This document shows, piece by piece, positions 4,719-21,304 of a DNA stretch of 23,885 bases. How positions within the stretch are numbered: position 1 is the stretch's first letter; each line of letters begins with the position of its first letter. The stretch comes from Octopus sinensis (Eukaryota): assembly GCF_006345805.1 (NCBI RefSeq), contig NW_021836510.1:1-23885 (forward strand). The letters run 5' to 3'. The translations under genes and the position numbers were made by a program. The notes beneath the pieces are model-generated. The model ran no database searches, was not told the origin of the DNA, and saw only the letters and a list, made by a program, of their open reading frames with translations.

Positions 4719-4721
<3 letters not shown>

Positions 4722-4933
4722 GGAATAAAAAATGGAGTCAACGCAGGTTTAAACAAGTATTTTTTCTTTCTACATATGTTTCAAAAATTCCACTGATACT
4801 TATTCAAAAGAATAAAAGGTATAAACAATGCAATCTTCTCTTCGGGAAAGTGAAAAAAACGAAACTTGTCAATACGACATTTTAGCAAAAAATGATGGAT
4901 TCGTATAGCGATAGACAGAACGCTATTAATATT
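4719..4933 (-). repeat. Inverted pseudo-LTR arm (left), reverse complement of 7034-7247
   Basis: Direct comparison shows three 1-nt indels and no substitutions over about 214 bp. Confidence 0.95.
4766..4850 (-). ncRNA. Minimal type-I hammerhead ribozyme motif in the inverted arm
   Basis: Minus strand reads ctttc-CCGAAGA-stem II-GAAAC-ATAT-GTA-gaaag, with a perfect 5-bp stem I. Confidence 0.75.
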
Positions 4934-4935
4934 CT

Positions 4936-6914
4936 ATGGATACTATGTTGGTTCAATCTGATAAGACTGGTAATCTGTACAAACTTTATAAAGACTATTA
5001 TTTGGAATTACTTGAAAAAGAAATTCAGAAAAAGTATTAAATTGCTGATAAAAGAATACTTAAGAAAGCCAACATCGAGGCTATGAAAATCATGGAGAAT
5101 ATAACCTACAAATGAAGACAGAACACTTGTTCCTAAGCAACCTAGGTTTATTTTGAAGGATCACAACCAAATTTTTTTACTAACCCAACATTAAGGCTTA
5201 TCTGCCCTTCTAGCTCTGACATCGGTATCCTTAGTAAAAATATACTAGATAAATATATTCCTAATCTAATCAAAACATTAAAACTTAGCTTATGGACTAA
5301 TTCATTTGACGTAGTTGACTGGTTTAGGTCTATTAACAGTAAGGTGAGTACGAAGTTATCCAGTTTGATATTTCCAATTTTTATTCGTCTATTAATCCTA
5401 TAGTACTTAATAAGGCACTTTGGCTTGCTCATAACAAAGCTGGTCTCACCCGAGAAGAAATTAATGTTGTGTTGGCAGCCAGAAGATCTATTATTAAATT
5501 TGATGATAAGTTTGGGTCCGTAAAGACACACCAGATAGTTTCGATATACCTATGGGAAGTTCTGATTCAGCACAGATAGCTGATTTGGTCTGTATATACA
5601 TTCTTTTTGAAATGGCTGAAGAGTTCCCTAACATTTATGGAGGTCTATATCGTGATGATTGTTTACTTTACCTCCAAAATGTTTCTAACCAAAAGGTACA
5701 AAAAGTTAAGAACAGTTTAGTTAATTTTTTCAGTAGAATGAGCTTAAAAATCGTTTTTGATGACGATCTGACGAAGGCCAACTTTTTAGATATTACCCTT
5801 AATTTACACAGTGACTTTTACTTCCCATATCATAAACCGTTGACCAATCTTAAGTACATTAGCAAATTTAGTAATCATCCTGGAGCAATTACTAAGAATT
5901 TAGTTAAGAATATTTCATTTAGATTATCTAAATTATCTGCTAATGTTGATATTTTCAATAATAACGCTGAATTCTATAACTCTGCCTTAATCAAAGCAGG
6001 TTATACAGAAAAAAATTTCTACATTGATTCTACTCAGTCTAATTGTAAGTTCAATAATGTAGATAAGGTTTCTAGTCGTAAAAGAATTATTGATAACAAA
6101 CATAACTTACGCACCGATACAAAGCGAATGAAGGCAGATAACCCTTATTTATTCCCCTATTACCGATCTAAAAGTAAATATAACACCTTCAAAAGTAATT
6201 ACGCTATGAATACTAGTAAAAATATTTGGTTAATAATTCCTTACGGGAGACAAATTAAATCTAATCTCCCACTGCTGTTTCGTCAAGCTATTGCTAGGAA
6301 TTTTCCAAATAATTCTAGATATTACTCTATAATTAATTCACATAAGGTTAGGATAGGTTTTTCAAACACAAAAAATCTCTTGCAAATTATATCTTCTCAT
6401 AATAACAAACTGTTAAATATTAATACATTTACTAATACTAACATTAATTTAGCTACTACCATCCAACCCTCTAGAAATATTAATAACAAGGTTATTGTAT
6501 CTGAAGTCAATCCCAATAGAATTAAATTTATGTCAAGTAACTCTAAGATTAAAAATTCTATATACCAGTGTATAATCAGTACTCGTAATAAAGTACGATT
6601 TTACATTGGAAGCACATCGTTAGAGTTATCTAGAATTCTATCCATTACTCAACATTTAGAGATAGAAATAAACGGAATAGTACCGGTCTCAGCAAACTGA
6701 TTTGGAATTTAAAAGACCACAATGAACAATTTCATTTGGAATGGTTGATCCCTCAATTTCGATACCATATGACAAAGGCAAGAAATTCTGTCTTCTCTGC
6801 AATTCTGAGCTATTTTTCATTATTTTTTCTAAAAATACTCTAGTAAACACGGTTATAGAACGAGCATACAGATGTAAGCATTGGCAAAAGCATACTTTTA
6901 GTGCATATAAGTAG
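4936..6914 (+). pseudogene. Frameshifted PLE polyprotein ORF (RT-thumb-linker-GIY-YIG); includes track ORF 5552-6700
   Basis: Stitched translation: MDTMLVQSDKTGNLYKL... / LVPKQPRFILKDH / FFTNPTLRLICPSSSDIGILSKNILDK...WTNSFDVVDWF / IQFDISNFY / WVRKDTPDSFDIPMGSSDS...YRDD...IYQC...YIGST / IHYSTFRDRNKRNSTGLSKLIWNLKD / SIPYDKGKKFCLLCNSE...RCKHWQKH, stop at 6912-6914. Six frameshifts and one in-frame TAA (5038-5040). Confidence 0.88.
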
Positions 6915-7033
6915 TCTCTATCATTATATATAGTTTAGACTTTAATTTCCTTTATATTTAACATTCACTATTAATATCCCTACTCTTTCTGTTAGCTACT
7001 TATGACGTTATATCATATAACGTTTTTTTAAAC

Positions 7034-7247
7034 AATATTAATAGCGTTCTGTCTATCGCTATACGAATCCATCTTTTTTGCTAAAATGTCGTATTGACAA
7101 GTTTCGTTTTTTTCACTTCCCGAAGAGAAGATTGCATTGTTTATACCTTTTATTCTTTTGAATAAGTATCAGTGGAATTTTTGAAACATATGTAGAAAGA
7201 AAAAATACTTGTTTAAACCTGCGTTGACTCCATTTTTTTATTCCTAT
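7034..7247 (+). repeat. Pseudo-LTR arm (right, sense), followed by a ~148-nt extension to the (TA)n tract
   Basis: Reverse complement of 4719-4933; lies downstream of the ORF stop at 6914. Confidence 0.93.
7116..7199 (+). ncRNA. Minimal type-I hammerhead ribozyme motif (variant CCGAAGA core, GUA cleavage triplet)
   Basis: cttc-CCGAAGA (7120-7126), long stem II (gaagattgcattg/cagtggaattttt capped by ttattc-tttt-gaataa), GAAAC (7183-7187), ATAT, GTA (7192-7194), gaaag. Stem I is one T short compared with the left arm. Confidence 0.72.
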
Positions 7248-7395
7248 TATTCAAATATTCAACGTAAACACGAAGTTTCAACCTTTATAAACAAGGAGTT
7301 ACAACATCTTTACTTGTGAGATTTTGCTGCCCTGGTAACTATTCATTCATTTATCCGTGTTAATTGTTAACAAGGTAAAATACACTCATCTATTT

Positions 7396-7400
7396 AATAT

Positions 7401-7446
<46 letters not shown>

Positions 7447-7495
7447 ATATATATATTATATACTGTTTGACAATATATAATATATATAATATATG
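7396..7495. repeat. (TA)n microsatellite at the PLE 3' junction
   Basis: Directly visible. Confidence 0.95.
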
Positions 7496-7694
7496 TCTCT
7501 ACTACACTATATACAGCTTCCTGTTAAACCACCATATAGATAAGTTTTTTTATTGGCCACACAGGGCTGCACACAGATGGGACAAGTTACAAGGTAGAGC
7601 TTTTCTTTTGGGGGATGAAAAAAAGGGGGTGGCGTAGGTTTTCGATCAAGAGGGATCGTAAAAGGGAAGAAAAGAACAACAAAGATTGACAGGC

Positions 7695-7763
<69 letters not shown>
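7695..7763. repeat. (AGAT)n microsatellite
   Basis: Directly visible. Confidence 0.95.
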
Positions 7764-7764
<1 letters not shown>

Positions 7765-7859
7765 ATTCATAGGTAGATAGATAGATGTACATGATTGTAT
7801 AGGAGCGTGTATATATGTGTATTCGTATATAGCACGGAGGAAATGAAAACATCATGGCC

Positions 7860-8870
7860 ACTACCCCCTACTACACCTGCTACTTCCACTACCACCACCT
7901 GTCCCCTTATGAATAAGTGCCGAAAATAGTTCAACATCTCCGCCACCACATCCACAAACCTTTCAGCACCTACACCATCATCACTAGTTCTACCACCCTA
8001 CTATTACCATCGCCACCGCCGTACCACCTCACAACACCCATAGCTACCACTACCACTGTCATCACTATCACCACCACCACCACCATCACCACAACAACCA
8101 CCACCACACCACTACCACCACCACACCACTATCGCCACCACACCACTACCACCACCACACCACTACCACCACCACACCACTACCGCCACCACACCACTAC
8201 CATCACCACACTACCACCACCACCACCACCAGTGTCATCACCACCACCATCACCCCAACAACCACCACCACACCACTGCCACCGTGGTACCACTACCACC
8301 ACCACCATCACTGCTACAAAGAGCACCGTACCACCTCACAACACCCACAACTACCACCACCGCTGCCATCACCATCACTATCACCACCATCACCACTGCA
8401 ACTACCACCACACCACTACCACCACCACACCACTACCACCACCACACCACTACCACCACCACACCACTACCACCACCACACCCTTACCATCACCACACCA
8501 CCACCACCAGTGTCATCACCACCACCATCACCACAACAACCACCACCACACCACTACCGTACCACCTCACAACACCTACAACTACCACCACCAGTGCCAT
8601 CACCGCCACTATCACAATTACCACCACCATCACCACTGCAACTACCACCACACCACTATCGCCACCACACCACTACCACCACACCACTACCATCACCACA
8701 CTACCACCACCACACCACTGCCACCGTGGTACCACTACCACCACCACCATCACCGCAACATCCACCACCGTCGCCACTACCACCAGCACCATGCTATTAT
8801 CAGAGCCACCACCACAGTCACCACTGCCACCCGCATTGGTTCGCCATCTACGCCACAACCTCCGCTAAAT
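7860..8870. repeat. (ACC/CAC/CAT)n low-complexity tract with higher-order repeats
   Basis: About 1 kb that is C/A-rich on +; gtaccacctcacaacacc recurs at about 8021, 8328 and 8560. Confidence 0.92.
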
Positions 8871-9096
8871 ACTAACATACGCCCTTACTAGCTAAACATG
8901 CCCACATCATTTTTCAGTCGTTTAAGCAATAACAATTTGAAAATTCGACTTACTAAGACAAAATGCTTTGACTCGTATTATAACCCGTCGCTAGATGTGG
9001 GAGTGTTTGGGTAAGGGTGACGGTAGTGTGTGTCTGTGTGTCTATGTATATGTGTGTATGTACCTTTATCATAAGGGAATAAGTATGTATAAACAC

Positions 9097-9190
9097 ATTT
9101 ATTTACTCTTTTCTGCTCTTTTACTCTTTTACACGTTTCAGTCATATGACTGAGGCCATGCTGGAGCACAGCCTTTAGTCGAACAATATA
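9097..9190 (-). mobile_element. 3' tail fragment of the composite SINE (B body)
   Basis: (ttactcttt)n-gtttcagtca...ggccatgctggagcac is the reverse complement of the 720-783 tail. Confidence 0.8.
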
Positions 9191-9237
9191 ACGGACATAA
9201 TGGAAATCAATATGCACAAGTCAAATTTGCAACACTA

Positions 9238-9878
9238 CTACATCAAAAAAAATGACATCGCTTAAATGGCAGCCATTTCCGGGTTCGCACGCCCGTGCTC
9301 TTTTCAAAACCTGTTTCTTTACTACCCACAGGGGGCTAAACACAGAGAGGACAAACAAGGACAGACAAACGGATTAAGTCGATTACATCGACCCCAGTGC
9401 GTAACTGGTACCTAATTAATCGACCCCGAAAGGATGAAAGGCAAATTCGACCTCGACGGAATTTGAGCTCAGAATGTAAAGGCACACGAAATACCGCTAA
9501 GCATTTCGCCCGGCGTACTAACGTCTCTGCCAGCTCGCCGCCTTTTCAAAAGGCTCTTTTCAAAACCGGCACCATAACACCCTCAAGTGTTTCAGACCCC
9601 GCTTCTCTGATTTCTCTATTGATGTTCTCCTTCAGTTGCATCAGGGCCTCCAGTTTGTTGACGTAAACCCTCTTTCAGATATCCCCACAAGGCAAAATCC
9701 GGACTAGTCAAGTCTGGGAAACGTGAAGGCCAGTTGACATTGCCGTAACGGAGATTATTCTCTCTCTCAAAGCACTGCCGTAGCAACTGCATTGTTTCTC
9801 TTACGGTATGAGGAGTTGCCCCATCTTGCTGGAACCATGTGTGAGGTCTACTTTGAATAGTCTTCATGACTAGCCTGA
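9238..9878 (-). mobile_element. Tc1/mariner DD41D (rosa-type) transposase C-terminal remnant, interrupted by a SINE
   Basis: WFQQDGATPH...WPSRFPDLTSPDFALWGYLKE with 41 residues between the second and third Asp. After a frameshift it reads RVYVNKLEALMQLKENINREI...VLKRA|RACEPGNGCHLSDVIF across the SINE. Confidence 0.88.
9312..9552 (-). mobile_element. tRNA-derived SINE with Nin/Deu-like central domain (family D here), 15-bp TSD
   Basis: Head ggcgagctggcagag...; core ggtcgaatttgcctttcatcctttcggggtcgat; TSD gctcttttcaaaacc at 9297-9311 and 9553-9567. Confidence 0.88.
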
Positions 9879-9879
9879 A

Positions 9880-9982
9880 TGACTAGTCCGGACTTTTCTA
9901 CTAGGGATATCTAAAAGAGAGGGCTTCACGTCAACAAACCAGAGACCCTCGTGCAGCTGAAGGAGAACATCAATAGAGCAAT
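9880..9982 (+). repeat. Inverted, diverged second copy of the transposase segment 9613-9710
   Basis: tgactagtccgga...ggatatct...cgtcaacaaac...gaaggagaacatcaatagag matches the reverse complement of 9613-9710 at roughly 80-85% by eye. Confidence 0.85.
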
Positions 9983-10240
9983 ACATACATTAGTCATGTC
10001 TGTCGGGCATGTGGAAGAGAGTGTAATTCGGCAGGAGGACTTAAACGACATGCAAAGGTACACGAAGCCCAGTTACAACTACAGCCGGCTATTACCAGTA
10101 AAGGTTTTAGTTGCCAATTCTGTACAAGACATTGTAGATCTTTAGCTGGGCTAAAAAGTCACATTCGATCACAGCACCAGTAACAGTTAAGCTTCGTGCA
10201 ATGGCCATACTCGATAACGAGGGGACAGCCATAATATATA
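9983..10240 (+). mobile_element. 3' end of an RTE-type non-LTR retrotransposon with two C2H2 fingers
   Basis: Frame open from 9977 to stop 10181-10183: CRACGRECNSAGGLKRHAKVH...CQFCTRHCRSLAGLKSHIRSQH. Short 3' UTR with a ctcg-ataa-cgag hairpin and ggacagcc, running into a TA/TG tail. Confidence 0.7.
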
Positions 10241-11196
10241 TGTGTGTGTGTGTGTGTGGTGTGTGTGTGTGTGTGTGTATACACCCGTATTCGCGCACAC
10301 TCTTAGCCAAGTTGATTGCTTTTTTTACACCAGTTTACACGTAGCCCACTTGGGCATAATCTCGTATACATTGGTGACTTGATTATAAACATTTTGCTGG
10401 ATCTGAAGAGAAGCCTACTCAGAAAAATTATGTTATCGATCATACTACGGAATAAAATGTGTCTTCGAGTCCACGTACGTAATTCAGTTACATCTTTGAA
10501 GTTTTGAAGTCATAGATAAACCACTGTTTGCTATGTCAAATCTTATTCTAACCTCATCTTCGGAATATTGATAAAATGTATTTACTGTGATGAAAGCGAA
10601 GAATGATGAAAGAGTGTTTACACGTATCAATGTACATTATAGATGCTTGCATGCATCAACAGCATATACCTATAAATAACAACACCCACACCTCCCACGG
10701 GACACTTACTAACAAAAATAAGTTCACTTCGAGAATGACCAAATGGATGGACCGTGATGAGGTTGCGGTGACAATATTGCAAAGCTGTATTTGTAACAAT
10801 GAGTTATTCACTGAAGCGGAAACACGTGTAGGCCGTTATAATATGCTGTATATAATTTGTAAAACACATGTTGTGGATGTGCAAGTCTCCATAGTCTTTA
10901 TTATAAATATTAATATACACTCCTGACAATTTTTACAGTCCGGCGAAAAGAACAGGGAATATATATTTATATATATATATCACATCGGAAGAATTCACGG
11001 AGTAACTAACGATTAAATGCAGTCAACGAATAATTCCTGGAGGTCGCTTTGTCCGACTAAAGGCGGTTCTCCATATATATATATATATTTATATATAAAT
11101 AGGTTATAAAAAATACTAGTTGTACAATAAATAGAATAATACAAAATTGGTTATATATTACAGTAAAAGCTACCAGCATGGCTGTAGTCTAATGAC

Positions 11197-11241
<45 letters not shown>

Positions 11242-11750
11242 AATAAATAGAACATATGCATATATATAAACATATATGTACGTACCTACCTCTACATGTA
11301 CATATACACGCATATATGTGTACAGGACACCAAAAAGACGTCGAACACATAGAGAGACGAAACACATAGACACAAACCAAGGAACAAGACAAGCAAAAAA
11401 GAGAGAGATACAGGACAATAAGCACAACGAAAAAACCCCTTCTTCAGTCGCTAAGATTTCATCTACTAACGTTTCGAAGGATAAAGCGAGACGTATACTT
11501 CGAAGAAAATTCCTTCCCGCGAAAAGCAAATCAATTAAAATTCTGAGATCTTTTCGCAGAGGGGTAAAAAAAAAAAAAAAAGCAGACGGTAACGACAGTA
11601 CAAACATTAAACAGTAAAAAAATATATATATAAACAGTGGAAAAATAAATATATAACAGTGAGAGACAGGACAAGGAGAACAAGATAAGAAGGGCTGTTA
11701 ACGCCAGACGAAAAAAGTATTGCAACGCTGGATTATCGTGGACGACGACA

Positions 11751-11786
11751 TATACATATACATACATACATACATACATACATACA

Positions 11787-11817
<31 letters not shown>

Positions 11818-11937
11818 GTACATATATTATATACATATACATATATCATATATCGTGAAATTTGATTTAGTATTATTAATTGAATTTTCCCTGTAAGATT
11901 GGAATAATATTCCCTAATATTATATATATATATATAT

Positions 11938-11983
<46 letters not shown>

Positions 11984-12103
11984 TATATGTATATATATAT
12001 GTATACATGTATGTATGTATGTATATATATATATGGTGTGTGTGTGTGTGTGTGTGTGTGTGTAGGTAGGTAGGTAGGTAAGCATGTAGGTAGGTAGGTA
12101 GGT
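11751..12103. repeat. Compound (CATA)n, (TA)n, (TG)n, (TAGG)n microsatellite region
   Basis: Directly visible, with a short unique spacer at about 11850-11915. Confidence 0.92.
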
Positions 12104-12391
12104 GTGTTCAAACTTTACCAATCTTCTAGACTTTATATTGACTATATAAAACTATTTTTAACAAAGAAATGCCATAACAAGATGAGTGATAGGTTGGCCA
12201 ATAAACTGACAGCTGTCAGCAGACGATAGCTCCAGTATTACAAACGATGGAACATCTCAGAATTTGTCTTCAGTTGCAATATAAAAAAAAGGTTTTTGAA
12301 TCATTCTGAAAATTCAAATTTATTGGAATTCTTATTGGTATTTCCATCAAGTGCTTTATTTTCTCTTTAAAATATTACATTCTTTTAATCC

Positions 12392-12826
12392 TTTATTCTT
12401 TTACTTGTTTCAGTAATTTGAATGCGGCCATGCTGGAGCACCGCCTTGATAAAAGTTTTAGTCGAATGTATCGACTGCAGTACTTATTCTCTTTACTTAT
12501 GAGCCCGGCACTTATCCGATCCGTCTCTTCAGCCGAACCGCTAAGTTACGGGGTCGTAAACACACCATCAAGCGGTGGAGGAGGGACAAATACAGACACA
12601 AAGACACACACACACACACACATACACACACACATATACACACATACACGCACACACATACATATACACGACGGACTTCTTTCAGTTTCCGTCTACCAAA
12701 TCCATTCACAAGGTTTTGGTTGGCCCGAGTCTATAGTAGAAACTTGCCCGAGGTGCCACGCAGTGGTACTGAACCAGAAACCATCTGGTTGAGAAGCAAG
12801 CTTCTTACCACACGGCCATGCCTGTG
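12392..12826 (-). mobile_element. Full-length composite SINE (A+B)
   Basis: Head, CA/TA slot at about 12595-12668, body and tail are all present on the minus strand. Confidence 0.88.
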
Positions 12827-12924
12827 CCTACATCTGAGGCATTGTTTAAAACGGAAATCATGACTCTCTCCACTCTACGAATAAGCCACAATTGAAAATT
12901 TTTATAACAAAGAAAAAAATCATA

Positions 12925-13152
12925 CAGTAACCCATCGACCATCGCGGTTGTTACGTTCCAAACCCCACCTCCGCGATAGGTGAAAATCCGCGAAGTAGAA
13001 ACAGTATATATTTTGTATATATTTTTTAAAGTATTTTTATAATTTGCATATATTCATTTTATTATAAATGCAAAACAACACCACGGAGGAATCGACGTAA
13101 GCTTAAATAATAAACCGCGATAAGTGAACCGCGATATGGCGAAGGATTATTG
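12925..13152. mobile_element. pogo/Tigger-like MITE
   Basis: Imperfect TIRs cagtaacccatcgaccatcgcggtt and (reverse complement) caataatccttcgccatatcgcggtt; TA at 12923-12924 and 13153-13154; subterminal ccgcgata repeats. Confidence 0.78.
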
Positions 13153-19461: not shown

Positions 19462-19650
19462 CCTTTTATTCTTATGTTTCAGCCATTGGAGTACGTCCAT
19501 GCTGGGACACTACTTTGAAGTGTTTAATTGAACAAATCGATCCCAGTACGTATTTTTGGAAGTCTGGTACTTATTCTATTGGTCTTGTTTTTGTTCAGCT
19601 GCTAAATTACGGGGACGTAAACAAACCAACATCAGATGTCAAGCGGTAGA
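19462..19650 (-). mobile_element. B body of the composite SINE
   Basis: ccatgctggg...gctaaattacggggacgtaaac...gtcaagcg. Confidence 0.78.
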
Positions 19651-19727: not shown

Positions 19728-19884
19728 ATATATTGCTGTGTGGTAAGAATCTTACTTCCCAACTATACGGTTCTGAGTTCAGTCCCACTGCGTGACACCT
19801 TGGACAAGAATCTTCTACTACAGCCTCAGGCCGACCAAAGCCTTGTGAATGGATTTGGTAGACAGAAACTAAAAGATGCCTGTC

Positions 19885-19917
<33 letters not shown>

Positions 19918-20179
19918 TACACACAACACACACACACACACACACACATACACACACACATATATATATGTATATATAATTGAGTAGTTGAATGAATTAT
20001 CTTATTATGGATAATTCGGCTAACCGATACCTGGGTAGCAAATTCACGTTAGAAAAACACGGTTGAAGCTACATGCCTAGGGCAGAGATCACGTGCTAAC
20101 GTGTGGAAATTTGTGTGTTTTTTTAAATACAAATAAATGAAAGAATGGAGTTGAACGATGAATTAACAAAATTCCTTTA

Positions 20180-20262
20180 TTTTCGACATATGTTTCGAAG
20201 GCTGCATATTCCTAATTTTGAAGGAATAAGGGGTGCATTATGCCGCCTTCTCATCAGGAAAA
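20180..20262 (-). ncRNA. Minimal type-I hammerhead ribozyme, canonical core
   Basis: Minus strand: ttttc-CTGATGA-gaaggc...gccttc-GAAAC-ATAT-GTC-gaaaa. All core positions match; predicted cleavage between 20185 and 20184. Confidence 0.9.
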
Positions 20263-20384
20263 ACAAGGAACTTATGTCAGCATCAACATGCACAAAAACT
20301 TTTAGATGACCCCTCGCTATGGGCTCCGTGTGGGCAGTCATCTAAAAGTTTTTGTGCATCTTGATGCTGACATAAGTTCCTTGT

Positions 20385-20467
20385 TTTTCCTAATGAGAAG
20401 GCGGCATAATGCACCCCTTATTCCTTCAAAATTAGGAATATGCAGCCTTCGAAACATATGTCGAAAA
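20385..20467 (+). ncRNA. Hammerhead copy with G5A core change (CTAATGA), predicted inactive
   Basis: ttttc-CTAATGA (20390-20396)-gaaggc...gccttc-GAAAC (20451-20455)-ATAT-GTC-gaaaa. Confidence 0.85.
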
Positions 20468-21304
20468 TAAAGGAATTTTGTTAATTCGTCGTTCAACTCC
20501 ATTCTTTCATTATTTGTATATATATATATATAATATATATATATTATATATATATATAAACACATATATATATATATGTATGTATATTTATGTGTTTGTT
20601 TATCCACTCACCATCGCTTGACAACTGATGTTGGTGTGTTTACACCTATGTTACTTAGTAGTTCGGCAAGGGATAGAATAAATACTAGGCTTACAAAGAA
20701 TGCGTCCTGGGGTCAGTTTCTTCTAGCCAGGACTATCCCATCTTCGACTGGTATCACTCTCACCAGTTCTTGAGGGCCTGTGAATGCCATACACCGCTCC
20801 TTCCTCCAGATACAGCAAGAAAAAGAAAAAAAGAAAAGTCAACGGACATAGGCATGGTGGTGTGGTATAAAATCCCGCCGTGCAGTTGAAAAGGGAGTAC
20901 CAGACTAGTGTTTATGCGGCCCTTTTTTCCCTCTTGTTGTCATATCTTGTTATTCTGCTGAGTTAAAGGATGGGCTGAAGTGCGACAGCTGAACATCGAG
21001 TGCGGCTACAGAGGCACTTGAAACATTTTATGTACCATTGTACACGTCACTGGGTTATAGATACTCGCGAGTAACAACTGTGGTCAGAATTACCATGAAT
21101 TAAGAGGGGAACTTTATCAATCAGGAAAGCTGGGGTCAGCAGAGTTATGCTTTGCATCGTTCATTGGCAAAGGTCCGGCTGGACTATTCCCTCTCGTTTT
21201 AGACTGCTCGCTAGAGTCTCGAGACCTTTGAACACTAACCTACAAGACAAGAAACAAATACTCACGGTCTCCCGTATGTTATCACTCAATATGTGCCAAT
21301 GATA

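What the first reader, a model, noticed from the sequence alone, without database searches (positions are those of the whole stretch)
19980..20519. ORF-less fold-back mini-retroelement built from two hammerhead ribozymes
Seen: 184/183-bp inverted arms around a 26-nt spacer. Each arm holds a minimal type-I hammerhead (stem I ttttc/gaaaa, stem II gaaggc/gccttc, GAAAC-ATAT-GUC). One arm continues about 147 nt to a (TA)n tract and the other ends directly in (TA)n. Established: Penelope-like elements carry minimal hammerheads in their pseudo-LTRs and make inverted insertions. Inference: this is either a ~540-bp non-autonomous, MITE-like PLE derivative mobilised in trans by relatives of the 4719-7395 element, or a one-off extreme 5' truncation with inversion. 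A multicopy family with fixed structure would be a ribozyme-only mobile system. I do not know of such a family described in octopus, but cannot exclude it.
Basis: partly seen in the sequence, partly recalled or inferred. Interest (0 to 1): 0.85.

Follow-up and report, generated by a model that had tools for sequence, protein, structure and literature searches.

The report
Aborted head-to-head Penelope retrotransposon insertion
The 540-bp fold-back is most likely the dead stump of one Penelope-like retrotransposon insertion into a (TA)n microsatellite, copied inward from both cut DNA strands; it is an ordinary by-product of how these elements insert, not a new ribozyme-only mobile element.

Summary
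Arms 20127-20310 and 20337-20519 (184/183 nt) differ by 3 substitutions and 1 indel around a 26-nt spacer. Each arm carries a minimal type-I hammerhead. Only the left-arm copy (minus strand) has an intact core; the right arm reads CUAAUGAG (G5>A).

The "mini-retroelement" reading is not supported. The long copy (arm plus 147-nt tail) is homologous along its whole length to the 3' ends of ORF-bearing Penelope-like elements (PLEs): the one at 4719-7395 in this window and one in Octopus sinensis.

Four octopod PLE insertions share one plan. Both ends lie in (TA)n. One copy stops at a fixed "..TAT" site 53-66 nt past the ribozyme cut site. The other runs about 135-156 nt further (the "tail"). The two copies are head to head.

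Published biochemistry predicts this plan: PLE protein nicks and extends both target strands and starts reverse transcription at two internal sites. Each fold-back copy holds sequence the other lacks, so they are two separate cDNAs, both aborted early.

Copy number in the source genome could not be tested here. A multicopy family therefore remains possible, at about 0.12.

The parts
19980..20126 (-). 147-nt 'tail' of the longer (tail-bearing) PLE copy. Its outer end (P2) merges into (TA)n. It contains the conserved motif TTTGCTACCCAGG (plus-strand coordinates 20030-20042).
   Evidence: It aligns along its whole length with the tails of the window PLE (7248-7397) and of the O. sinensis PLE in L001 (12311-12445).
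20127..20310 (-). Left arm: the 3' pseudo-LTR segment of the tail-bearing copy, 5'-truncated at 20310.
   Evidence: About 70% identical to L001 12122-12430 over 325 aligned columns (arm plus tail), E 1e-34.
20179..20263 (-). Minimal type-I hammerhead with an intact core. Stem I is UUUUC/GAAAA, followed by CUGAUGAG. Helix II is a 6-bp stem with a 44-nt insert. Then GAAAC-AUAU-GUC, with the predicted cut after C20185. ACAUAUGU is a palindrome, which marks the dimer type.
   Evidence: RF00163, 23.5 bits (below the gathering score of 34), full-length model match. The descriptor hits once against 0 expected.
20311..20336 (+). The 'spacer'. At least 20319-20336 is the 5' continuation of the right-hand (tail-less) copy. 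20311-20318 is unassigned and may be junction filler.
   Evidence: ATGGGCTCC (20319-20327) matches L001 12100-12108 at the colinear position. 11 of 2000 shuffles do as well. The opposite orientation shows no match (1476 of 2000).
20337..20519 (+). Right arm: the tail-less copy. It ends at the P1 site ..TTTGTAT|(TA)n, 57 nt after the ribozyme cut position.
20384..20468 (+). Hammerhead copy with core substitution G5>A (CUAAUGAG, A at 20392). Probably inactive.
   Evidence: RF00163, 15.8 bits, E 0.19. Mismatch list.
20517..20591 (.). (TA)n target microsatellite, right side. The left side is (TA)n/(CA)n at about 19901-19979.
4719..4933 (-). Comparator in the same window: the inverted, tail-less 215-nt copy of the PLE 3' segment. 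It ends at ..TTCCTAT|(TA)n.
   Evidence: 98.6% identical to 7034-7247
4934..7397 (+). Comparator: the decayed, 5'-truncated PLE main copy. [quoted passage not shown] A degenerate hammerhead has its GAAAC..GUA end at 7183-7194. P1 lies at 7247. The 150-nt tail spans 7248-7397 and runs into (TA)n.

Best explanation
The fold-back is the product of a single, dead-on-arrival insertion of a Penelope-like element (PLE) into a (TA)n microsatellite.

Inferred sequence of events:
1. A PLE ribonucleoprotein nicked both strands of the AT-rich target.
2. Each 3'-OH primed reverse transcription of PLE RNA. One started at the distal start site (P2, the end of the 147-nt tail). The other started at the proximal start site (P1, about 57 nt past the hammerhead cut site).
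3. Both cDNAs stopped early, after about 331 nt and about 205 nt.
4. Their inner ends were joined head to head.

The hammerheads are passengers. They are present only because the ribozyme lies 53-66 nt upstream of P1 in the parent element's pseudo-LTR. After insertion the arms picked up 3 substitutions and 1 indel, and one substitution (G5>A) disabled the right-arm ribozyme.

The piece has no ORF and no evident promoter. If it were read through, it would fold into a 184-bp hairpin rather than an active ribozyme.

Basis of each step:
- Shown: the anatomy, the homology to PLE 3' ends, and the recurrence of the P1/P2 ends in (TA)n.
- Established elsewhere: nicking and extension of both strands, and two internal start sites that define the tail.
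- Inferred: this particular locus arose that way and only once.
For: (1) The long copy (arm plus tail) is homologous end to end to PLE 3' ends. It aligns with the window's own PLE (alignment A1). It is about 70% identical over 325 aligned columns, E 1e-34, to an ORF-bearing O. sinensis PLE.

(2) Four independent octopod insertions share the same plan: the fold-back, window 4719-7397, L001 copy 1, and Argonauta L021.
- Both outer ends lie in (TA)n.
- One copy ends at a homologous ..TAT|(TA)n site, 53-66 nt after the hammerhead cut site.
- The other copy carries a 135-156-nt tail.
- The copies are head to head.
- The inverted copy ranges from 36-42 nt (L001) through 215 nt (window PLE) to 2.9 kb (L021), so the fold-back sits inside a continuum.

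(3) Each fold-back copy holds unique sequence. The tail is only in the left copy. The spacer is colinear only with the right copy (9/9 match, 11 of 2000 shuffles). They are therefore two separately templated copies.

(4) Literature. PLE protein cleaves and extends both target strands, prefers AT-rich DNA, and starts reverse transcription at two internal sites whose interval is the 'tail'. The hammerhead is dispensable for insertion in vitro (PMC11167929). An inverted 5'-truncated copy, a one-sided tail and a (TA)n bias are described PLE features (PMC8557442).

(5) PLE coding remnants in the window lie only at 4933-6911. The fold-back has none.
Against: - Copy number in the source genome was not measurable, because no octopus DNA collection is searchable here. 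Uniqueness is therefore inferred, not shown.
- The tails here are about 150 nt. The literature describes 30-40 bp, so equating P1 and P2 with the two published start sites is an analogy.
- No parent copy more than 70% identical was available. The assignment of the spacer rests on a 9-nt match (about 0.6% of shuffles do as well).
- The tail-less inverted copies of the two window elements are oddly similar in length (about 205 and 215 nt). A purely random stop does not predict that.
- A (TA)n target hides any target-site duplication, and no empty site was available.
Confidence: 0.75

Rival explanations
1. The fold-back is one member of a multicopy, ORF-less family derived from a PLE 3' end. Transcripts carrying the P1-tail-P2 module at their 3' end would be recognised and copied in trans by PLE reverse transcriptase.
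For: - The tail-bearing copy keeps the whole region between and around the two putative start sites, including the motif TTGCTRCCCWGG conserved in all four tails.
- It also keeps an intact hammerhead.
- Non-autonomous PLE derivatives exist elsewhere: retrozymes and non-autonomous Chlamys elements.
- The tail-less copies are similar in length in the two window elements (about 205 and 215 nt).
Against: - No second copy turned up in the window or in about 77 kb of other octopod DNA fetched. That sample is tiny.
- Nothing in the structure needs a family to explain it.
- The spacer is ordinary parent sequence.
- A 184-bp perfect hairpin is a poor reverse-transcription template and a likely RNAi target.
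- No promoter was identified.
Confidence: 0.12
2. A single short 5'-truncated PLE insertion was later turned into a palindrome at the DNA or cDNA level. Possible routes are snap-back self-priming of the first cDNA, replication fold-back or hairpin repair, or an assembly artefact from a fold-back chimeric read.
For: The short 26-nt centre and near-perfect arms resemble snap-back or fold-back products.
Against: - Neither copy is a subset of the other. The tail is unique to the left copy, and the spacer is colinear with the right copy only.
- The tail-less end falls at the same homologous ..TAT|(TA)n site as in three other PLE insertions.
- The 3 substitutions and 1 indel between the arms argue against a read or assembly artefact.
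Confidence: 0.08
3. The hairpin has been co-opted as a small-RNA precursor (a hairpin or endo-siRNA or miRNA-like locus), whatever its origin.
For: - The predicted hairpin has a free energy of -343.7 kcal/mol, z-score -39.
- It gives sub-threshold hits to generic miRNA hairpin models: mir-561, 49 bits against a gathering score of 90.
Against: - All Rfam hits are below threshold and reflect only the presence of a long hairpin.
- There are no expression data.
- No conservation could be tested.
- A 184-bp stem is not miRNA-like.
Confidence: 0.05

Closest known systems
Canonical (C-terminal GIY-YIG) Penelope-like element insertions with an inverted 5'-truncated copy and a one-sided 'tail' (Evgen'ev & Arkhipova 2005; Arkhipova 2006; Craig et al. 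2021, PMC8557442)
   Same: - Head-to-head inverted copies.
- Heavy 5' truncation.
- A tail on one end only.
- A hammerhead in the pseudo-LTR.
- Insertion into an AT-rich microsatellite.
   Different: - Both copies are truncated to 0.2-0.33 kb, so no ORF is left.
- The tail is about 150 nt, against the described 30-40 bp.
- In that paper a (TA)n bias was highlighted for Naiads. Here it is seen for a hammerhead-bearing element with a C-terminal endonuclease.
PAc (Poseidon, Anolis carolinensis) in vitro insertion system (Frangieh et al. 2024, PMC11167929)
   Same: It supplies the mechanism:
- Both target strands are nicked and extended.
- AT-rich sites are preferred.
- There are two internal reverse-transcription start sites, and their interval is the tail.
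- The hammerhead is not needed for insertion.
   Different: - It is a different clade and host.
- Its start sites are tens of nucleotides apart, not about 150.
- Nothing here was tested biochemically.
Non-LTR retrozymes of animals (Cervera & de la Pena 2020, PMC7229834; Li, Clavereau & Pollet 2026 preprint, 10.64898/2026.07.22.740005)
   Same: They are ORF-less sequences derived from PLE pseudo-LTRs. They carry type-I hammerheads with a short palindromic helix III. They occur in molluscs (mussel).
   Different: Retrozymes are direct tandem repeats. Their same-strand ribozymes excise a unit-length RNA that circularises. Here the two ribozymes are inverted, one is mutated, and there is no tandem array.
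L1 5' inversions by twin priming (Ostertag & Kazazian 2001; from my own knowledge, not checked in the paper library here)
   Same: Two cDNAs are primed from the two target strands and joined, giving an inverted 5' part.
   Different: In L1 the two segments are adjacent, non-overlapping parts of one RNA. Here they overlap almost completely. That implies two templates, or re-use of one, and defined internal start sites.
MITEs and fold-back DNA transposons
   Same: Short, ORF-less, with long terminal inverted repeats.
   Different: There is no sign of a transposase-type terminal repeat or target-site duplication. The arms are reverse-transcribed PLE 3' ends, and the ends are asymmetric because of the tail.

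Membership tests
Penelope-like element (fragment of an insertion) | Sequence homology to the 3' region or pseudo-LTR of an element that encodes a PLE RT and a GIY-YIG endonuclease | tested here: met
   - About 70% identity over 325 aligned columns, E 1e-34, to the 3' end of the O. sinensis PLE in L001.
- Full-length alignment with the 3' end of the window PLE.
- That element has YRDD and a YIG remnant, and its relatives carry PF01541 GIY-YIG and weak RVT_1.
Penelope-like element (fragment of an insertion) | Own ORF with RT and GIY-YIG endonuclease | tested here: not met
   No PLE coding similarity lies outside 4933-6911. Translations of the fold-back found no protein. It is therefore a fragment, not an autonomous element.
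Penelope-like element (fragment of an insertion) | Insertion architecture: an inverted 5'-truncated partner copy, a tail at one end only, and an AT-rich or microsatellite target | tested here: met
   The same architecture occurs in three other octopod PLE insertions. The features are as described in PMC8557442 and PMC11167929.
Hammerhead ribozyme, type I (Rfam RF00163; PLE minimal or dimeric variant) | Conserved core (C3 U4 G5 A6 N7 G8 A9, G12 A13 A14, A15.1-U16.1, H17) with helices I, II and III in type-I order | tested here: met
   Left arm, minus strand: all core positions are present and the model matches end to end. The descriptor hits once against 0 expected. Right arm: not met, because of G5>A.
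Hammerhead ribozyme, type I (Rfam RF00163; PLE minimal or dimeric variant) | Score at or above Rfam's gathering threshold | tested here: not met
   23.5 and 15.8 bits against a threshold of 34. There was no hit in the whole-window gathering scan. The penalty comes from the 50-nt insertion the model places in helix II and from the 2-bp helix III.
Hammerhead ribozyme, type I (Rfam RF00163; PLE minimal or dimeric variant) | Self-cleavage activity | not testable with these tools
   This needs in vitro transcription. PLE minimal hammerheads are reported to be weak and to depend on dimers or protein (PMC4209133; PMC11167929).
Non-LTR retrozyme | Head-to-tail tandem repeats, each with a same-strand type-I hammerhead | tested here: not met
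   The only two copies are inverted. There are no direct repeats of the unit.
Non-LTR retrozyme | Expression as unit-length linear and circular RNA | not testable with these tools
   No transcriptome data were available.
Multicopy non-autonomous (MITE/SINE-like) family | Many dispersed copies with the same termini and the same internal junctions | not testable with these tools
   - No octopus genome can be searched by DNA here.
- There were 0 extra copies in the window and in 4 octopod loci (about 77 kb).
- Metagenome scans found nothing, and the viral-contig scan gave only unrelated phage hits.
microRNA or hairpin RNA gene | A match to a curated hairpin family at its threshold | tested here: not met
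   mir-561 scores 49 bits against 90. MIR172 scores about 31 bits against 70.

The most novel reading that the evidence does not exclude
Fold-back 'double 3'-end' PLE stumps like this one are a recurrent class in octopus genomes that can be mobilised in trans. Each would keep the P1-tail-P2 recognition module and a live hammerhead. Their long hairpin transcripts would feed the small-RNA pathway against the parent PLEs.
Probability: 0.1. Interest if true: 0.6.

Novelty: new member of a known kind. Interest (0 to 1): 0.18.

Why it matters
The value is mostly in annotation. Short fold-backs with hammerhead motifs in cephalopod genomes should be read as aborted PLE insertions. They are not MITEs, microRNA hairpins or new ribozyme elements.

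There is also a modest point for specialists. The four octopod insertions compared here form a natural record that fits the two-strand, two-start-site insertion model proposed from one lizard element in vitro. They suggest that in octopods the two start sites lie about 150 nt apart, around a conserved TTGCTRCCCWGG motif. They also suggest that (TA)n is the usual target of a hammerhead-bearing PLE with a C-terminal endonuclease.

Tried and rejected
- Rfam scan of the whole window at gathering thresholds: no hit. The 611-nt E<=10 scan returned only generic hairpin hits caused by the inverted repeat. The hammerhead model surfaced only when each arm was searched alone.
- Search for other copies through their accidental ORFs. 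I joined all stop-free translations of the fold-back and searched 5.8 billion proteins: nothing at E<=10.
- Two exact-pattern scans of JGI metagenome contigs with ribozyme patterns specific to this family: 0 hits. One scan of viral contigs gave 17 hits. All were an unrelated phage coding region without a CUGANGA box.
- The third protein search, with P0001, returned only itself and one weak hit, so it yielded no more octopus PLE loci.
- Exact-protein look-ups of two window ORFs, to find the source contig or an orthologous empty site: not on record.
- The L002 'palindrome' at 8959-9185 is a run of N (an assembly gap), not a fold-back.
- ENA contigs L022 and L023 carry unrelated PLEs and do not match the fold-back.
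- Snap-back or DNA-level palindrome origin: rejected as the main explanation, because each copy has unique sequence.
- Retrozyme reading: rejected, because the repeats are inverted, not tandem.

Full report
**1. The observation**

The inverted repeat is real.
- The repeat finder reports ungapped arms 20136-20310 and 20337-20511 (175 nt, 98% complementary, 26 nt apart).
- A gapped alignment extends them to 20127-20310 (184 nt) and 20337-20519 (183 nt). They differ by three substitutions and one single-base indel.
- The left copy continues outward for 147 nt (20126 to 19980) into a (TA)n/(CA)n tract. The right arm runs directly into (TA)n at 20517-20591.

**2. The hammerheads**

On the minus strand of the left arm the sequence reads UUUUC-CUGAUGAG-AAGGC-[44 nt]-GCCUUC-GAAAC-AUAU-GUC-GAAAA.
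- This is a type-I hammerhead with every core position intact, a G10.1-C11.1 pair and a 2-bp helix III.
- The helix III box ACAUAUGU is palindromic. That is the signature of the minimal, dimer-dependent hammerheads of Penelope-like elements (PMC4209133).
- A strict descriptor hits once in the window, against none in 100 shuffles.

Rfam's Hammerhead_1 aligns end to end but below threshold.
- The left arm scores 23.5 bits against a gathering score of 34. The model places a 50-nt insertion in helix II, and that insertion and the tiny helix III cost score.
- The whole-window scan at gathering thresholds found nothing.
- The right arm, on the plus strand, reads CUAAUGAG. This is a G5>A change in the catalytic core at 20392, and it scores 15.8 bits.
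- So there is one intact ribozyme motif and one probably dead one, and they lie on opposite strands.

**3. What the arms are**

The window's other element (4719-7397) is a decayed, 5'-truncated PLE.
- Its nearest proteins come from Octopus sinensis, O. bimaculoides and Argonauta hians.
- Its relatives carry PF01541 (GIY-YIG).

Its 3' end aligns with the fold-back's longer copy over the whole length, tail included (alignment A1). The 3' end of an ORF-bearing O. sinensis PLE (locus L001, 12122-12430) is about 70% identical to the fold-back's arm plus tail over 325 aligned columns, E 1e-34. The fold-back therefore consists of PLE 3' ends. It has no PLE coding remnant of its own.

**4. The same plan in full-size insertions**

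| Insertion | Tail-less copy and P1 end | Cut site to P1 | Tail | Evidence |
|---|---|---|---|---|
| Fold-back | 183-209 nt, ends ..TTTGTAT\|(TA)n | 57-58 nt | 147 nt | |
| Window PLE | inverted copy 4719-4933 (215 nt, 98.6%), ends ..TTCCTAT\|(TA)n | 53 nt | 150 nt (7248-7397) | |
| L001 copy 1 | inverted piece 8757-8798 (36-42 nt, 100%), ends ..CTAAATATATA\|(TA)n | 66 nt | about 135 nt | |
| Argonauta L021 | main copy, ends ..TTTCCTAT\|(TA)n at 13012 | 54 nt | 156 nt (6646-6801, on the inverted copy) | |

- In the window PLE, the main copy runs on from the homologous position through its 150-nt tail into (TA)n.
- In Argonauta L021 two copies lie head to head. Their arms are 2741 nt long and 100% identical, and 729 nt unique to one copy lies between them.
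- In all four insertions both outer ends lie in (TA)n and the copies are head to head.
- The fold-back is the small end of a size continuum, not a distinct design.
- The four tails share a conserved block, TTGCTRCCCWGG (alignment A2).

**5. Mechanism**

Published work supplies the mechanism (Frangieh et al. 2024, PMC11167929). A purified PLE protein:
- nicks and extends both strands of the target, unlike R2 or L1;
- prefers AT-rich DNA;
- starts reverse transcription at two internal sites of the RNA.

The 'tail' seen at one end of genomic copies is the stretch between those two sites. The hammerhead is not required for insertion in vitro. Craig et al. 2021 (PMC8557442) describe inverted 5'-truncated partner copies, one-sided tails and a (TA)n bias as PLE hallmarks.

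The fold-back is what this model predicts if both cDNAs abort early. One is primed at the distal site P2 and copied for about 331 nt. The other is primed at the proximal site P1 and copied for about 205 nt. The two are then joined head to head.

**6. The spacer**

- Read on the plus strand, the spacer contains ATGGGCTCC (20319-20327). This matches L001 12100-12108 at the colinear position, just upstream of the arm homology. Only 11 of 2000 shuffles do as well.
- Read on the other strand it matches nothing (1476 of 2000).
- The spacer is therefore the 5' continuation of the right, tail-less copy.
- Each copy holds sequence the other lacks: the tail in one, the spacer in the other.
- This argues for two separately templated cDNAs. 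It argues against snap-back self-copying, later DNA palindrome formation or an assembly artefact.
- The call rests on a short match to a 70% relative and should be rechecked with a closer parent copy.

**7. Why it is not a two-ribozyme element**

- The ribozymes are inverted, so any transcript carries one sense hammerhead plus its exact antisense.
- The 540-nt RNA is predicted to fold into a 184-bp hairpin (-343.7 kcal/mol). The isolated ribozyme fold has -30.9 kcal/mol.
- One of the two cores is mutated.
- Known ORF-less hammerhead elements of animals, the non-LTR retrozymes, are also derived from PLE pseudo-LTRs. They are direct tandem repeats that release unit-length circular RNA (PMC7229834; 2026 preprint).
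- That defining feature is absent here.

**8. What could not be tested**

None of the searchable DNA collections holds octopus sequence.
- Metagenome scans found nothing, and the viral-contig scan gave only unrelated phage hits.
- The translated-ORF search found nothing.
- Exact-protein look-ups for the source contig failed.
- The window and about 77 kb of other octopod DNA contain no second fold-back, but that sample is far too small to count copies.

The arms do match the ends of longer ORF-bearing copies, and the spacer is ordinary parent sequence. The uniqueness of the junctions remains unmeasured.

One oddity stays unexplained. The tail-less copies of the two window elements are nearly the same length, about 205 and 215 nt.

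**9. Verdict**

- This is a new example of a known kind: a dead-on-arrival, doubly primed PLE insertion.
- Confidence is about 0.9 that it is made of PLE 3' ends in the standard PLE insertion architecture.
- Confidence is about 0.75 that it is a one-off.
- Interest is low (0.18).
- The residual novel reading is a recurrent, trans-mobilised fold-back family that feeds small-RNA pathways. I give it about 0.1.

Noticed in passing
window 4719-7397: A second PLE insertion has the same plan as the fold-back. Its parts are a tail-less inverted copy (4719-4933), a decayed 5'-truncated main copy with frameshifted RT and GIY-YIG, a degenerate hammerhead (CCGAAGAG ... GAAAC-AUAU-GUA) and a 150-nt tail. 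Both ends lie in (TA)n.
   Followed up: yes
window 20030-20042 (minus strand) and 7323-7336 (plus strand); L001 about 12375-12390; L021 about 6690-6705 (minus strand): The block TTGCTRCCCWGG is conserved in the tails of all four octopod PLE insertions, although the surrounding sequence is only 60-70% identical. It is a candidate recognition site for the reverse transcriptase, lying between the two putative start sites.
   Followed up: partly
L021 (Argonauta hians, BAAFZT010000013.1) 6646-13012: A head-to-head PLE pair has 2741-nt arms at 100% identity, and a 619-aa PLE protein is annotated in the main copy (10001-11860). This looks like a very recent insertion, so the family may still be active in Argonauta.
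   Followed up: partly
L001 (O. sinensis, CM016882.1) 12446-12515 and 8799-8855: The second PLE copy in tandem is preceded by an inverted fragment of about 40 nt from the tail end. This fragment is 78% complementary to the neighbouring tail and leads straight into the ORF start. Copy 1 instead begins with a direct copy of the last 18 nt or so of the tail. The 5' junctions of these elements are more varied than their 3' ends.
   Followed up: partly
window about 4719-4933 compared with 20311-20519: The tail-less inverted copies of two different PLE families in this window have nearly the same length (215 nt and about 205 nt). This could be coincidence or a preferred stop or template-switch point. 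It is unexplained.
   Followed up: no
window 19740-19880 and 20600-20720 (also 19599-19645 / 20615-20661): Sequences flanking the microsatellites look like fragments of a tRNA-derived SINE (GGTTC.GAGTTCAGTCCCACTG box). They lie in opposite orientation (79% complementary over 47 nt). The (TA)n target may be a SINE-associated microsatellite.
   Followed up: no
window 8069-8791: A 720-bp strongly C-rich tandem array (CAC)n with a 17-nt unit CACCACTACCACCACCA and GC skew -0.76. It creates spurious ORFs (for example 7917-8891).
   Followed up: no
proteins P0001, P0004, P0005, P0027 (NCBI annotations): Octopod proteins named 'myb-like protein I' and 'GATA zinc finger domain-containing protein 4/14-like' are fragments of PLE reverse transcriptase. 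They were probably misnamed because of low-complexity N-rich linkers.
   Followed up: partly
L002 8982-9168: An apparent 113-nt perfect palindrome is a run of N (an assembly gap) inside a (TA)n tract. It is an artefact of the repeat finder on masked sequence.
   Followed up: yes
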